Below are positions 20,388-26,859 of a stretch of DNA of 64,000 nucleotides, piece after piece. Made by a program: the position numbers and the translations under genes. The notes under the pieces are model-generated. The model saw nothing but the letters and a program-made list of their open reading frames with translations, was not told where the DNA came from and did not search any database. The stretch covers positions 372,001-436,000 of the forward strand of contig CAJFCJ010000002.1 of NCBI GenBank assembly GCA_904063045.1, in the 5' to 3' direction. Each line of letters begins with the position of its first letter. Positions within the stretch are counted from its first letter, which is position 1. Source of the DNA: Dimorphilus gyrociliatus. Taxonomy: Eukaryota > Animalia > Annelida.

Positions 20388-22328
20388 AAACAATCAAGTT
20401 ATATCCAACTTTTGATTTAATAATGACTATTTTAAGAAGAAAATATACAAGAAAGCAATAATATTCCTCAAAGGAGCGAAAATTTAATCAAAAAGTGATT
20501 GTTGTTGTTTAACTTGACACCTTGAACAACTTCAATTAGATTGTTTTTAATTAATATTTTACCCTGGCGGTTTATATCAATTGCGAAGTCTTTAAATTAA
20601 CTACAAATTTTAAATATAAAGTTAGAAAATCACTATATATACTGTATATTTTTAATCATTAGGGGGTAGAGAAGATGCGAAAACTCATCCGAATTTTTGC
20701 ACTTAGTATAGACATTCACAGTATTATCTACTCATACTTGATAAGTCGCGTATATTAATAGAATATCATCATTATAAGAAAGTAAACCAAAGGTTAATGG
20801 AGAAATTACATTCCGATGGGAGAAATTTAATTATTTCCTTTTGTTTCCATTCAACAGACAAATAGCAAGCTCCTAGGGGATCTTTAATGAAAACAAATAA
20901 AGAAAAAAAGAGGAACCTAACACTCTAAATGTTCGCATTGTTTTTGTATCGTGTTTAAGCAAATAGGTGGTATAATCATTCTGTTAGTTTATAATTGTGT
21001 AATGGATTTAGAGTGTGGAATTCTCATTTTCTTATTCAAAAAACTCATTTACTATCTCCTTTCTCAATATTAAAAGTAGAAAACTATCCAATGAAAAATG
21101 ACAATTTGGCTAATATATTACATTTTTGAAGGAGGTATATTTGACTTTACGAAGAAAAATAAATATTAATTCAGGTATGATTGATAGATCTGAATTATTT
21201 TGTGAGAAAACGATAATGGATATTTCATAAAGATTATTTATTTAAACCGATTTTGGAGAGCTACTCGTAAAGATCCTCGGTTCATAATCTTTATTAGAAT
21301 CCGATTTCCTTCAGATTCTTTCAGAATTGATTTTAGCTGTTGAACTCTTAGAGGGAAGGTCATTTAGCGGAAAGGAAGTAGAAACTACTAAAAAAAAGAA
21401 AGAATGACGTTTTCTGGCACATACTTCACATTTTGGAAATTAAATTGTCTTATGAATGGGTTAATAATGTCCATCTAACCAAATTTATACTATTCCATGT
21501 TGGCTAAGCTGGTGGTAAAAGTGGATAGTAAGGACGTAGCTATCCAACAAGACTGGAAATTGACATGCGAACTAACTAACGAGTTTTATTTGTTTCCCGT
21601 TCGATATATTCCTCTTCAAATAGTTATTCGATAGCTGATATAACGATACATTTGGTTGCGTGAATTTGTGCAGAATAGATAATTAATCCATGTTTATTTC
21701 TTAAATGATAGAGAACGATTTAAGCCTAGTTTTTGCATAGGAAAACCATTTAGGCAGTCTGATGCATATTTGTGGAGTAGTCTCAATCCTTTTAACCTCT
21801 GATAAAAAATAAAGGATGGAAGTGAAAATTCTGTACATAGCTCACTCAAAATTATTTGATTTTAAGTCACGAGTGCTAAAGTTTTACTTTATTTTGATTG
21901 GATGACTATTAATGAATATCCTATTAAGCTTCTTTATGAGGTATAATGTTATAAAAATCGTATTAATCGATAATAAAAATGAAAGCGTTGTCTATATGTA
22001 TAGATATTTTCATACACAATATTTTCTTAAAAGGAGAGACTTAAGCTAATAGCTCATGGCTCTTCTCTTTCTTATTCTTTCGTACTAATAGTATATTTGT
22101 GCTTCATTGTGTAAATTTATGACAGTAGACAAATCCCAAAAAGACCATTACATATGATACGGAATAAGAAGGGAAATAGTTTTTTAACACCTTACTGAAT
22201 ATTTAAACCTTGAACAGAAACCTGAATTTGGTTCGGCATCTTCAGTATGAGAGCATTAGCCCCTGTCTATATAAATAAATTTTAGAGGGCGTTACTGCTG
22301 CTCGATTTTTGCAGTGGTAGTGGGAAAG

Positions 22329-23381
22329 ATGAGCGATAGACGAGAAGAAATCCAGCTAGCCGATTGGGAAGAAAGATTATGGCTAGTAGCAAAAGTGATT
22401 ATAACATTAGCCGTAGTCTCTACTAATATTTGTCTTCTGATATCTTTGCCGATTGACAAGCGACTAAGAAACTCTGCATCAAGTCTACTCATCTTTAATA
22501 TGTCCTTCGTCGACTTGCTTATTGCTTCCTTCTACCTGACTTTCCTAATAGGTGGAGATATAGGACAAGCTTCTAATTGGTTACCCAACCGATGGAGAAC
22601 TAAACTTTGGTTAACAACATCTTCATTACTTTTATCTATGTCCATCATCACTTCATTAATCGTTAACATCGAAAGATTGATAGTTGTCATCAAACCATCA
22701 TTATCGAACAGAAGTAAAACGTTTGTCAACGTGCTCATGCTAACATTAGCCTGGATAGCATATGCTATCGGAACATTTACTTATTATTCCAACTGTGCGG
22801 AGCAAGCATCTTTGAAAGATTGGAAGAAATTAGTTATGAACGTTGCGGTGTGCGGTTGCGGTATAAAGGCCATTGTTCAATCGCTTGTTATTTTTTTCCT
22901 GCCATCGTCAGTTTCGCTAATTCTAAATATCATTATATATTGCAAGTCCCGGGCCACATATCGTCCCGTGAGACCATCAGCCGAAGAAGAAGAAGATCAA
23001 GAAGTTCCAAGGACTGCTATGACTTTTAGTCCCCTTGTAAAATGTCTTGCTCATAGCCTTTTTATTGTCCTATATCTACCTTTTTTCGTTGCTGCAATTT
23101 GTCGCCAGAGGTCAGTTCCATTAAGTTCACACATAACCTATGCCGTTCAGTGGTTTGCTGCAGTTAATTGCGCAGTAAACCCATTTATCTGGTTATTGGA
23201 TGACGATGTTCGAAAGTCTTATATCCGAGTCGTGAGGACAATTTTTTGCGAAAAGAAAAATAAGCCTATTGAGGGACGAAGTGAAAGCCTGGTCGTTCTA
23301 CAAGATGTTAGATCAGAGGATTCGATGAGAGATTTGGGAGACGCGCTAGCAAGCATGGCGGATGTGGCAGCTATACTATAA
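22329..23381 (+). CDS. Orphan class A (rhodopsin-like) GPCR, intronless
   Basis: Seven hydrophobic segments; TM1 N (VSTNICL), TM2 NMSFVDLL, TM3 end IERL, TM4 W, TM5 FFLPS, TM7 NCAVNPFIW. Confidence 0.85.
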   Translation: MSDRREEIQLADWEERLWLVAKVIITLAVVSTNICLLISLPIDKRLRNSASSLLIFNMSFVDLLIASFYLTFLIGGDIGQASNWLPNRWRTKLWLTTSSLLLSMSIITSLIVNIERLIVVIKPSLSNRSKTFVNVLMLTLAWIAYAIGTFTYYSNCAEQASLKDWKKLVMNVAVCGCGIKAIVQSLVIFFLPSSVSLILNIIIYCKSRATYRPVRPSAEEEEDQEVPRTAMTFSPLVKCLAHSLFIVLYLPFFVAAICRQRSVPLSSHITYAVQWFAAVNCAVNPFIWLLDDDVRKSYIRVVRTIFCEKKNKPIEGRSESLVVLQDVRSEDSMRDLGDALASMADVAAIL

Positions 23382-23523
23382 AAACCATGTTCAACATTAG
23401 TTGCGAATAGACCAACATAAAGTAACGTTTGATCGATCGCAATAAAAGGGCTCAATTAAGGGGATTTTTTATTTATACGTAGCCGAGTAAAAATTGTCCT
23501 TTAGCAGTTTTCTTATTTAAAGT

Positions 23524-25853
23524 TCACGTGAGGAGCATACGAGTTGGATTATGCAGCAATATAGCTTTATTTGGACGTCCAGCAATCATATAAATCGCTT
23601 GATCTTTCACAAACTCTTCCCACGTAACGATTCTGTGAATTGAAATTGAGTTAGAACTGTTCGCTTCTTTTTTAAGTTTTCCAGCTAATTATCAATTTAT
23701 AAGCGTTAAGTATAGATTTCTATTACTATTGACAAAATTTTTTCAGGGTATATTCTATAAGTCTTTTCTTATAATTGGTTAATGTGAATCCAGTAAAGTA
23801 AACTTTTGTGACAATTTGTGCAAATGATTCGTCTGCTATACCTTTTAAATTGTACGTTTAGTAGACCAGGACTATTGCTGCAATCCCTAAAAGAAACCGT
23901 AAAAGTCATCTACCTATCGCTTCTACTTAGTTGAAGAAGGAATAAGAGCTATTATACGGCGCCATCTATTGTACTCACCCGTCCCTATCAAAATCAGCTT
24001 GCATGAAAACGTTAGCGCTATTGCCAGCTCTTTCAGCCGCTATTCCTGCTCCTGGGTAGTTGGGTCTCGTCATACCATTCTCACTAGTCTTCTTTATCCT
24101 TTTTCTGTTTACTCATTTGTTTTAATGAATATATTGTATAGGCCCACAAAAAATCCTTACTCTAAACAAGCCAAACGACTTCTCTCCAACTCGTCAAGCC
24201 AGGATTTATAGGCACGATGAGCCTCTAATTCGGTTATTACTCCGTTCCTGTCGACATCGAATTTTTGGAAGAGACGTCTGAGTTTCTCCACTTCTCGAAC
24301 CGTTAATAATAAAACCACTTCTTTCTGTATCATAATAGTTTCATTAACAATTTCGATATGACACTATCAAAAGGATAGTATTTTACGAAAGGATTATAAT
24401 ACAATATAGCCCAGAGGGCCTTTTCTTATCTCTTCTTTCTTACTTTTGTTCTTCTGTTCAAGTAGGATAATGATTCATGTTTAATAAATTCCCAGTAATC
24501 AATAGATCCAGAATTATCTAAATCCATAAATCTGAAATTATACATATTCATTTCAACTTCGAATTCAGGCATTTCACTTCCTTCCTCTCTTCTATACAAA
24601 GATTTCTTGAATTCAATATACTCTTCTAAAGAGATGGAAGCGTCTAAAATAATTACAATTCTTATAATATTCTTCAACTTAAAATCGAATAGCAGATGCA
24701 AAAATGCATGTGTTATAACTGTTATGACAGTTTCTTCTATTAAAACTAATAATCATCAGGTGTCAAATGTTGTTTATAAACATCAGACAAGAGTTCTTTT
24801 ATAAGTAAACATACCTCTATTTTTGTCTAATTCCTCAAATTCATCACACATTGTACTCATTTCTTGAGGTGATAGCAAGTCGTGAATGTTATCCTAAATA
24901 TAATTAAGGTAACAATTAAAATCAATAGGTAGCTAAATATTTGTAAGTATGTTAGAGTAGCCATTGGCCTTAATCGTAAATGAAAAGTACAATTTACAAA
25001 ATGAAGCGTCTAAAGATATTTTAAAAAAATCTACAAATGAATGCTGTTGGTAATTGATAAATAACGTCAATAGCAAGGCAATTGGATTATTTACATTAAA
25101 TGATTGCTTATCAAATATATACACGTACACAATCCGGGCAACTCCATCCGATATCTGTGTTAGAATTTTTAACAAATTCGTCGAAGACCTTCTGATTTTC
25201 CAAACATTTTTTGTGGAAAGTTCTACCGCAAATTCGACAGGAATGGCAAGAACTAAGAGCGAGCTTGTTACAAATAGTGCAATTACTATCCTGTAGGCAA
25301 TTAGAAAAAGCAACTTGTCATATTTTTTTAACTATCAATAATCTCTATTTAAGTATTATACATTTACTAATGTTCCCCTTTGACTCTTCATCAGATTTTC
25401 GTGTTCTAGTTCAGAGTCTTTACAAACAGATTTTGGCGATTTATTTTCATATAAATCTGGCTGAAAATTGAATAATATTTAGCGTAATAAACTTATTATG
25501 GAAGTGACAATAATATTTTATGAGGAATGATAGGCTATAAGTGTATCAGATAATCGATTTATACTTACGAATCTACTGAACGCCTGCTCCGATACAGTGC
25601 TATTCTCTATCTCTTTCCATGATAGCTCCTTCTCTTCTTTGCTACATCATTTCGATTTATATTTATAAAATTCACACAATATTTATGGAACTAACCTTCG
25701 TCTGATAAATTCCCTCATCTCGTCCCTTGACATTGTCGGATAGGCCTGATCGACTTTTCCTTTTAAATATGTTAGTACTTGAACTTTCTTCCATACTCTC
25801 TTGGCCTTCAAATTTTCCTCCTCGTTCTCTTTCTTACTCGCTCCAGAACCCAT
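23524..25853 (-). CDS. PHF24: PHF24/GINIP orthologue: N-myristoylation motif + PHD finger + 4 EF-hands (at least 9 exons)
   Basis: Starts MGSGAS. The PHD exon 25290-25129 reads CTIC...CRICGRTFHKKC...GWSCPDC. It continues [30 protein letters not shown] and C-terminal VTWEEFVKDQAIYMIAGRPN. These parallel vertebrate PHF24 ([54 protein letters not shown]), as recalled from memory. Confidence 0.88.
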
Positions 25854-26859
25854 ATTTTTGTTGTCTAGATTCAAAATGAATCAACGAACTAACATAGAAT
25901 ACAGCAGAGCGTACTTTCATATATACATACCTTTAAACCCTTCACAATTGAGTATTTATTCAATCGTCTTCAATAGATCAGTTAGCCTGTTGTATTTAGA
26001 CTACGTAGTCTTCCATTTCAATCTTTTAACTAACAAAAAGAGAAAATCATTATGGTAACGTGTATAATTAACGTAATCGGAGAATAACCTGGAACTTTCA
26101 TTTCCCGCCGCCTTACGTCACGGGGACTATTTTGTAAAACGAACAACCACTTAATTGTTCTTTAATTAAAAAAAACGGCTTAAGATTTGTGTGTTAGGCC
26201 TAATTGAATCTAATAATAAAATAATGTAGAATATTGGCTAGAGCGTAGGCATCAATAAACAGAAGAAGATAGCGCTTATCTGTAGACAAACGAAATTCAC
26301 TCACGTCGAAATGTTGAATGTTATCAGTGAATTGTCAACTTTATGACTGGTATGTAAAGAGAGGCTTGTCCTCATTCAATATCTGATTTTTTGGCTATAA
26401 AAATGCCTAACTTTCAACACTTTGGATCAGAAATCAGTTTTGGTAAGTCTAATGGATTGATACTGCGATGTTACTGAGAATCAGAACAATGTTATTACAC
26501 GAATAGATGACCGTAAATTCTAATAATTGCTCTTATCAACACATTTCTTACATGGAATATATTCTTTTCTCGATTCTATAATAATAAAAATAAGAGAGGT
26601 TGCAATGGGTGTCGTGTATAGTAGCGTAACACCAAGTCAGGTGGTATTATGCTGTTATTCACGAAATCTAATTGCGATAGTCATCGACAAAAACGTCAGG
26701 TGGCGTCGGTATCGTTGGACGCCCCGTCGAAAAGCTATATATTCCGAAGCATGTTGTAGACGCCCCTAATAAAAACTTCGACGTCTCATTAAACTCAAAG
26801 TAAGTATATATGCTAGAGAATTAATATAATATTTAATGCTTGTTATCCTTGATTAGACA

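What the first reader, a model, noticed from the sequence alone, without database searches (positions are those of the whole stretch)
23524..25853. Invertebrate PHF24/GINIP with four near-canonical EF-hands: a possible Ca2+-gated Galpha-i regulator
Seen in the sequence: an MGSGAS myristoylation start, a PHD finger and four 12-residue loops, DKNRDASISLEE, DLDNSGSIDYWE, DVDRNGVITELE and DFDRDGIVTWEE, all with acidic/polar 1-3-5 ligands and Glu12. Established: vertebrate PHF24/GINIP binds activated Galpha-i in sensory neurons. From recalled sequence, its equivalent segments are degenerate EF-like regions. Inference: the ancestral protein may be a membrane-anchored Ca2+ sensor coupling calcium to Gi/o signalling, a function not described for this family to my knowledge.
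Basis: partly seen in the sequence, partly recalled or inferred. Interest (0 to 1): 0.85.

Follow-up and report, generated by a model that had tools for sequence, protein, structure and literature searches.

The report
Worm PHF24-like protein, four EF-hands
A tiny marine worm (Dimorphilus gyrociliatus) expresses a relative of the vertebrate G-protein regulator GINIP/PHF24 that keeps four intact-looking calcium-binding sites, where sampled vertebrates keep at most one. It lacks the two residues that human GINIP needs to bind its G protein, so it is probably a calcium sensor whose link to G proteins is unproven.

Summary
A nine-coding-exon gene on the minus strand (ATG 25853, stop 23524) is expressed.

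- **Product:** 389 aa. It starts MGSGAS, has a KIAA1045-type PHD finger (Pfam zf-RING_15 above its cut-off) and four EF-hand loops with full ligand sets.
- **Annotation:** public data hold it as the unnamed DgyrCDS1010 of Dimorphilus gyrociliatus.
- **Family:** it belongs to the PHF24/KIAA1045 family.

Across the family, invertebrates keep canonical EF1-3, and annelids also keep EF4. In 116 non-mammalian vertebrate representatives EF1 and EF2 were degenerate in all, and EF4 in all 110 that aligned. EF3 is canonical in 93 of 116, so "all degenerate" is only partly right.

The Ca2+-gated Galpha-i regulator reading is weakened in two ways:
- Human GINIP needs V138 and W139 of PHD loop 1 to bind Galpha-i. 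The worm has Lys and Leu there.
- The literature already notes putative Ca2+ sites in GINIP, and Ca2+ did not change binding by the human protein.

Verdict: a new, well-preserved member of a known family. It is a probable membrane-tethered Ca2+ sensor with an untested partner. Interest is moderate to low.

The parts
25931..26025 (-). 5'UTR exon. Its upstream end is approximate because the transcript contig ends there.
   Evidence: Joint 25864/25931 in the X4 transcript contig. The UTR has an in-frame stop upstream of the ATG.
25696..25864 (-). Exon 1. The ATG is at 25853. It encodes MGSGASK, an N-myristoylation-type start (Gly2, Ser6), followed by a helical N-terminal region.
   Evidence: The MG start is conserved across the family.
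25569..25641 (-). Exon 2
   Evidence: Joints 25641/25696 and 25460/25569.
25362..25460 (-). Exon 3. The transcript shows the donor at 25362, 6 nt beyond the nearest GT.
   Evidence: Joint 25290/25362.
25129..25290 (-). Exon 4, the KIAA1045/PHF24-type PHD finger (aa 114-164 = 25129-25281). Loop 1 is aa 118-127 (25240-25269) and reads NKLALSSCHS.
   Evidence: Pfam zf-RING_15. The best PDB hits are the PHF24 PHD structures 5xht and 1wil. Loop alignment.
24815..24893 (-). Exon 5, encoding the entering helix and the first 4 residues of EF1 (loop aa 187-198 = 24815-24827 plus 24621-24643).
24444..24643 (-). Exon 6, encoding the rest of EF1 and all of EF2 (loop DLDNSGSIDYWE, 24489-24524).
24161..24324 (-). 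Exon 7, encoding EF3 (loop DVDRNGVITELE, 24223-24258). The public annotation starts this exon 39 nt earlier, which adds 13 aa. The transcript contigs do not show that form.
23979..24104 (-). Exon 8, encoding a linker and the first residues of EF4 (loop aa 349-360 = 23979-23995 plus 23614-23632).
23524..23632 (-). Exon 9 coding part, encoding the rest of EF4, the conserved C-terminal RPN motif (23569-23577) and the TGA stop at 23524-23526. The 3'UTR continues downstream.

Best explanation
The locus is the expressed Dimorphilus gyrociliatus gene DgyrCDS1010, a member of the PHF24/KIAA1045 (GINIP) family.

Its 389-aa product is most likely N-myristoylated, and so membrane-associated. It carries a calmodulin-like module of four EF-hands, all with complete Ca2+ ligand sets, behind a family-specific PHD finger.

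The most likely mechanism is that Ca2+ binding to the two EF-hand pairs changes the conformation of the module. That change would alter how the PHD finger and N-terminal region engage a partner at the membrane.

The partner may be an active Galpha-i/o subunit, as in vertebrates, but this is not shown and the sequence argues for caution.

What is shown: the gene structure, expression, family membership, intact EF-hand ligands and a predicted four-EF-hand fold. What is inferred: myristoylation, Ca2+ binding, any Ca2+-dependent switch and the identity of the partner.
For: - A spliced, mismatch-free transcript confirms the gene model.
- Pfam zf-RING_15 and EF-hand models score above their curated cut-offs.
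- The best solved-structure match of the PHD exon is the PHF24 PHD.
- The protein aligns along its full length with proteins named PHF24 or PHF24-like, including the MG start and the RPN tail.
- All four loops have Asp1, Asp/Asn3, Asp/Asn/Ser5, a hydrophobic residue at 8 and Glu12.
- The AlphaFold model gives pLDDT of about 90 over the EF region. It shows four helix-loop-helix units, each with a short strand.
- Foldseek aligns 205-227 columns to calmodulin, calcineurin B and troponin C at probability 1.00.
- Related species show mostly synonymous change in the differences that were listed.
- EF1-3 are canonical in 12-13 of 14 other invertebrate members. EF4 is canonical in both Owenia paralogues. 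Conservation of the ligands therefore looks selected.
Against: - No Ca2+ binding was measured.
- EF1 has Ala instead of Gly or Asn at loop position 6, which may lower its affinity.
- The Galpha-i contact residues V138 and W139 of human GINIP are Lys and Leu here.
- Binding of human GINIP to Galpha-i3 is insensitive to Ca2+.
- The worm protein sits on a long branch and its paralogue assignment is unresolved.
- The structure was predicted for the annotated 402-aa form, which carries a 13-aa insert that the transcript contigs do not show.
Confidence: 0.6

Rival explanations
1. It is a true functional GINIP. It binds active Galpha-i/o through PHD loop 1 and biases GPCR signalling towards Gbeta-gamma, with Ca2+ occupancy of the EF-hands gating that binding.
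For: It belongs to the family and shares the architecture. Its EF-hands are intact. Loop 1 has the same length as in vertebrates (10 residues) and keeps a hydrophobic Leu at the Trp139 position.
Against: In human GINIP, V138A or W139A alone abolishes Galpha-i binding. The worm has Lys and Leu at those positions. The V-W/V-Y motif occurs only in vertebrates, amphioxus and Owenia_410. Ca2+ has no effect on the human interaction.
Confidence: 0.2
2. The EF-hands are structural sites, constitutively loaded with Ca2+ or Mg2+, or Ca2+-independent scaffolding. The protein then acts as a Ca2+-insensitive adaptor, as human GINIP appears to.
For: Human GINIP works in EDTA and is unaffected by Ca2+. EF4 has been lost repeatedly in molluscs, amphioxus and vertebrates without loss of the gene.
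Against: Full ligand sets are conserved at EF1-3 in almost all invertebrate members, and at all four sites in the annelids Dimorphilus and Owenia. That is hard to explain without selection for metal binding.
Confidence: 0.15
3. It is an annotation or assembly artefact, or a pseudogene with chance EF-like motifs.
For: None found. The only discrepancy is a 13-aa difference between the public annotation and the transcript.
Against: There is a mismatch-free spliced transcript. The 389-codon frame is open across nine exons. Domain scores are above the curated cut-offs. Spliced orthologous transcripts occur in related species, with mostly synonymous differences.
Confidence: 0.01

Closest known systems
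Vertebrate PHF24 / GINIP (KIAA1045), the Galpha-i-GTP-binding neuronal regulator
   Same: The MG (myristoylation-type) start, a helical N-terminal region and the KIAA1045-type PHD finger (PF16744). Also four EF-hand-shaped modules in the same order and the conserved C-terminal A-R-P-N motif. Identity is about 26-29% over about 290 aa.
   Different: The worm protein has four canonical EF loops. Sampled vertebrates have at most EF3. PHD loop 1 lacks the E-V-W motif: V138 becomes Lys and W139 becomes Leu. Galpha-i binding is therefore unproven.
Lophotrochozoan 'PHD finger protein 24-like' proteins (Haliotis, Gigantopelta, Aplysia, Lottia, Crassostrea, Owenia_364, Lamellibrachia)
   Same: They fall on the same side of the 97/87 split in the tree. 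They share a divergent PHD loop 1 (Gigantopelta KKLALADGYL against worm NKLALSSCHS), canonical EF1-3 and an MGSGAS-type start.
   Different: Most molluscs have lost EF4, while the worm keeps it. Identity is only about 30-33%, and the worm protein is on a long branch.
Owenia fusiformis 410-aa PHF24 (P0030) and amphioxus PHF24 (P0029)
   Same: Same architecture. P0030 also has an MGSGAS start and four canonical EF loops.
   Different: They keep a vertebrate-like V-Y-T-G loop 1, so they combine the putative Galpha-i-binding motif with intact EF-hands. That makes them better test cases for a Ca2+-gated GINIP than the Dimorphilus protein.
Calmodulin / calcineurin B / troponin C (four-EF-hand Ca2+ sensors)
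   Same: The predicted EF region aligns over about 205-227 columns to these structures at probability 1.00, and loops 2 and 4 match the EF-hand pattern.
   Different: Identity is only about 16-23% and TM-scores are low because the lobes are arranged differently. The EF module is preceded by about 170 aa (N-terminal helices plus the PHD finger), and there is a long linker between EF3 and EF4.

Membership tests
PHF24 / KIAA1045 (GINIP) family | KIAA1045-type PHD/RING finger (Pfam PF16744) above the curated cut-off | tested here: met
   It scores 39.9 bits against a cut-off of 30.8 on P0132. The exon alone scores 29.7 bits. The best PDB matches are 5xht and 1wil, the PHF24 PHD.
PHF24 / KIAA1045 (GINIP) family | Collinear architecture: MG start, PHD finger, four EF-type modules, C-terminal RPN motif | tested here: met
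   Alignments. The invariant columns include the PHD Cys/His residues, G-W-S-C and R..N of the tail.
PHF24 / KIAA1045 (GINIP) family | Mutual retrieval with proteins named PHF24 | tested here: met
   The family profile retrieves DgyrCDS1010 at E 1.3e-96 among PHF24 proteins. The worm model's best local BLAST hits are PHF24-like proteins. The nearest Atlas clusters are 'PHD finger protein 24(-like)'.
PHF24 / KIAA1045 (GINIP) family | Galpha-i contact residues of PHD loop 1 (human V138 and W139) | tested here: not met
   The worm has Lys119 and Leu120. All 116 vertebrate representatives have E-V at the two loop positions counted, and the 20 shown in full read E-V-W. This feature defines the function, not the homology.
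PHF24 / KIAA1045 (GINIP) family | GTP-dependent binding to Galpha-i | not testable with these tools
   It needs a pull-down or BRET assay.
One-to-one orthologue of vertebrate PHF24 | Placement with the Owenia_410/amphioxus/vertebrate group rather than the fast-evolving lophotrochozoan group | tested here: inconclusive
   The ML tree puts it in the lophotrochozoan group (97/87). An AU test does not reject the alternative (p 0.30). I could not check whether Dimorphilus has a second copy.
Canonical Ca2+-binding EF-hand proteins (calmodulin-like four-EF-hand module) | 12-residue loops with ligands at positions 1, 3, 5 and 12 and a hydrophobic residue at 8 | tested here: met
   All four loops meet this. 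Loops 2 and 4 match the PROSITE pattern in full.
Canonical Ca2+-binding EF-hand proteins (calmodulin-like four-EF-hand module) | EF-hand profile scores above cut-off and a paired helix-loop-helix fold | tested here: met
   EF-hand_1 54.1, EF-hand_7 51.5 and EF-hand_6 49.6 bits. The model has four helix-loop-helix units, each with a short strand, at pLDDT of about 90. Foldseek hits calmodulin, calcineurin B and troponin C.
Canonical Ca2+-binding EF-hand proteins (calmodulin-like four-EF-hand module) | Measured Ca2+ binding | not testable with these tools
   It needs ITC, 45Ca overlay or a spectroscopic assay.
NCS/recoverin-type Ca2+-myristoyl switch proteins | N-myristoyl group directly preceding a compact four-EF-hand globule into which it can be sequestered | tested here: inconclusive
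   A Gly2/Ser6 start is present. However, about 170 aa, including a PHD finger, separate it from EF1. The top structural matches are calmodulin, calcineurin B and troponin C rather than NCS proteins.

The most novel reading that the evidence does not exclude
The ancestral bilaterian PHF24/GINIP was a membrane-anchored four-EF-hand Ca2+ sensor that coupled Ca2+ to heterotrimeric G-protein signalling. Vertebrates lost three of the four sites and became Ca2+-independent. Annelid proteins such as this one, and above all Owenia P0030, which also keeps the V-Y loop, would still work as Ca2+-gated Galpha regulators.
Probability: 0.15. Interest if true: 0.7.

Novelty: new member of a known kind. Interest (0 to 1): 0.35.

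Why it matters
GINIP/PHF24 is a recently characterised post-receptor regulator that biases Gi-coupled neurotransmitter signalling and affects pain and seizure susceptibility.

The comparison suggests that the family began as a real four-site EF-hand protein. Vertebrates then kept at most one canonical site (EF3). That fits the reported Ca2+-insensitivity of human GINIP.

The comparison also picks out the members in which a direct Ca2+-to-G-protein link could still be tested: Owenia P0030, amphioxus, and with less confidence this worm protein.

For genome annotation, it gives a name and a corrected exon boundary to an unnamed Dimorphilus gene.

Tried and rejected
1. Searching the 5.8-billion-protein index with the annotated worm protein found only itself, because no exact 5-residue words are shared with relatives. 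Family members came instead from the PHD exon search, a Haliotis query and a family profile.

2. An alignment of one full-length homologue with the window's exon pieces (A2) misplaced the pieces, so I did not use it.

3. The spliced 389-aa protein has no single reference, so I did not type it into any tool. Whole-protein Pfam, Atlas and structure runs used the annotated 402-aa P0132. That form differs only by a 13-aa insert in the EF2-EF3 linker, and the model's confidence dips there.

4. No mammalian PHF24 was among the 120 listed hits, so the human EF regions were not examined. Only the human PHD sequence was seen, in PDB entries.

5. Literature searches pairing GINIP, PHF24 or KIAA1045 with EF-hand or calcium-binding found no paper on Ca2+ regulation of the family, only gene lists and marker mentions. 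The one relevant paper is Luebbers et al., found with the GINIP-only search.

6. An artefact or pseudogene reading was rejected.

7. Earlier notes of this scan hold nothing on PHF24 or GINIP in this genome.

Full report
**Observation**

The region 23524-25853 holds, on the minus strand, a gene with nine coding exons and canonical GT..AG introns.

I laid public contigs on 22200-26600. Run X4 is evidently a transcriptome assembly. Its 3545-nt contig matches the window without a single mismatch and skips exactly the predicted introns.

There were two refinements:
- The donor of exon 3 is at 25362, 6 nt beyond the nearest GT. This adds Val-Asn.
- A 66-nt intron lies in the 5'UTR (25864/25931).

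The ATG at 25853 is the first in-frame ATG after an in-frame stop. The product is 389 aa.

Three further runs from two related organisms carry spliced contigs about 90-95% identical with the same exon structure. Of the ten coding differences listed, eight are synonymous. That points to purifying selection, although most of the differences found were not listed.

**What the protein contains**

- The start, MGSGASK, fits the N-myristoylation rule (Gly2, small residue at 6). I applied that rule from memory.
- Residues 114-164 form a PHD finger. Its best Pfam model is zf-RING_15, the "KIAA1045 RING finger", at 39.9 bits against a cut-off of 30.8 on the whole protein.
- The best solved-structure matches of the PHD exon are the PHF24 PHD entries 5xht and 1wil.
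- The four loops start at residues 187, 231, 280 and 349. All have Asp1, Asp/Asn3, Asp/Asn/Ser5, a hydrophobic residue at 8 and Glu12.
- Loops 2 and 4 match the PROSITE EF-hand pattern in full. Loop 1 has Ala at position 6 and loop 3 has Ala at position 13.
- EF-hand Pfam models score 50-54 bits, about twice their cut-offs.

An AlphaFold model was built with a 30-sequence family alignment. It has mean pLDDT 77, and about 90 over the EF region. It shows four helix-loop-helix units, each with the short strand typical of paired EF-hands.

Foldseek aligns 205-227 columns of the model to calmodulin, calcineurin B and troponin C at probability 1.00.

**Identity of the gene**

A family profile search returned DgyrCDS1010 of Dimorphilus gyrociliatus (P0132, 402 aa). 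It is identical to my model except for 13 extra residues. These come from an acceptor 39 nt upstream of exon 7, which the transcript contigs do not show.

The gene is predicted in public data but carries no name.

**Family membership**

The worm protein aligns end to end with proteins named "PHD finger protein 24(-like)" or "KIAA1045 homolog". These come from Haliotis, Aplysia, Elysia, Gigantopelta, Crassostrea, Mercenaria and Branchiostoma.

It also aligns with unnamed Owenia and Lamellibrachia proteins at 30-34% identity, and with vertebrate PHF24 at 26-29% over about 290 residues.

Shared hallmarks are the MG start, the PHD Cys/His scaffold with G-W-S-C, and a C-terminal A-R-P-N motif. The nearest ESM Atlas clusters are again PHF24(-like). 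Membership of the PHF24/KIAA1045 family is therefore well supported.

**EF-hands across the family**

I scored each loop with a ligand-based rule: D1, D/N/S at 3, D/N/S/T/E/G at 5, a hydrophobic residue at 8, and E/D at 12.

| Loop | 14 other invertebrate members | 116 vertebrate representatives (birds, reptiles, amphibians, fishes) |
|---|---|---|
| EF1 | 13 canonical | 0 canonical (K-I-I-P-E-...) |
| EF2 | 13 canonical | 0 canonical (D-P-D-K-K-G-...-D) |
| EF3 | 12 canonical | 93 canonical (D-Q-D-x-D-G-x-I-x-x-x-E) |
| EF4 | 3 canonical (both Owenia paralogues and one unnamed sequence) | 0 of the 110 that aligned |

No mammal was in the listing.

Pfam agrees with this picture. A bird and a fish PHF24 pass EF-hand cut-offs at EF3, while Xenopus laevis, whose EF3 has decayed, shows no EF-hand hit.

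A four-site ancestor with stepwise loss is the most economical reading.

**The Galpha-i question**

Luebbers et al. (bioRxiv 10.1101/2023.04.20.537566) show that human GINIP binds active Galpha-i through loop 1 of the PHD finger. The V138A and W139A mutations each abolish binding and function.

The PDB sequence of the human PHD fixes the numbering: E137-V138-W139-T-A-E-S143-L-F145-P146. All 116 vertebrate representatives carry E-V at the two loop positions I counted, and the 20 vertebrate sequences shown in full all read E-V-W-T-A. Amphioxus and the 410-aa Owenia protein carry V-Y-T-G.

The Dimorphilus loop has the same length but reads N-K-L-A-L-S-S-C-H-S. This gives Lys and Leu at the two critical positions, and it resembles the loop of the gastropod Gigantopelta (K-K-L-A-L-A-D-G-Y-L). 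Galpha-i binding therefore cannot be inferred from homology.

[quoted passage not shown] It reports that neither myristoylation nor 200 uM Ca2+ or EDTA changes binding of human GINIP to Galpha-i3. The Ca2+ idea has thus been raised and tested, with a negative result, for the human protein. Nothing was found for invertebrate members.

**Phylogeny**

A maximum-likelihood tree of 27 sequences has a well-supported split (97/87):
- One side holds the worm protein, the molluscs, Owenia_364 and Lamellibrachia.
- The other side holds Owenia_410, amphioxus and the vertebrates.

All protostome sequences group together at 93/80. Because Owenia has a copy on each side, this suggests a lophotrochozoan duplication into a slow, vertebrate-like copy and a fast-evolving copy, with the Dimorphilus gene of the fast kind.

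However, the worm protein sits on a long branch. An AU test does not reject placing it with the slow group (p 0.30). The paralogue assignment stays open, and I could not check whether Dimorphilus has a second copy.

**Most likely mechanism**

The protein is probably tethered to membranes by an N-terminal myristate. It probably binds Ca2+ at up to four sites in a calmodulin-like module.

Ca2+-driven opening of the EF-hand pairs would be expected to change how the adjacent PHD finger and N-terminal helices meet a partner. The partner could be a Galpha-i/o subunit, but the loss of the V-W motif makes a different or modified interface at least as likely.

The rival readings, scored in the Rival explanations section, are these:
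- a true Ca2+-gated GINIP;
- a Ca2+-insensitive adaptor with structural EF-hands;
- an artefact, which is excluded.

**Novelty and verdict**

The gene and its family are already in the databases, and EF-hand domains are annotated automatically on them. What is new is modest:
- a transcript-verified model and a name for the Dimorphilus gene;
- the family-wide pattern of EF-hand retention and loss;

This is a new member of a known kind, of moderate to low interest.

Noticed in passing
window 22314-23381 (+): An intronless 355-aa ORF encodes a rhodopsin-family GPCR (7tm_1, 55.5 bits). Its best solved relatives are aminergic receptors (beta-1 adrenergic, 47 bits). It converges on the 3' end of the PHF24-like gene. 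The X4 contig runs from the PHF24-like gene straight through it, so the 3' ends probably overlap or the assembler merged two transcripts. I did not test whether this adjacency of a GPCR and a GINIP relative is conserved elsewhere.
   Followed up: partly
window 24325-24363 (-): The public annotation (DgyrCDS1010, 402 aa) uses an acceptor 39 nt upstream of exon 7, which adds CHIEIVNETIMIQ to the EF2-EF3 linker. The transcript contigs of this species and its relatives show only the short form. This is either a mis-annotation or a minor isoform.
   Followed up: partly
window 26413-26600: A separate, more deeply covered transcript contig of run X4 (2795 nt, word depth about 490) begins just upstream of the PHF24-like gene, so a highly expressed neighbouring gene lies there. 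I did not examine it.
   Followed up: no
P0030 and P0026 (Owenia fusiformis, same 62-Mb contig): Owenia has two PHF24-family genes on one chromosome-scale contig. One is vertebrate-like (V-Y loop, 410 aa) and one is divergent (364 aa). Both have four canonical EF loops.
   Followed up: partly
5'UTR exon, about window 25931-26025 (-): A short upstream ORF (ATG GAA GAC TAC GTA GTC TAA) lies in the 5'UTR of the transcript.
   Followed up: no
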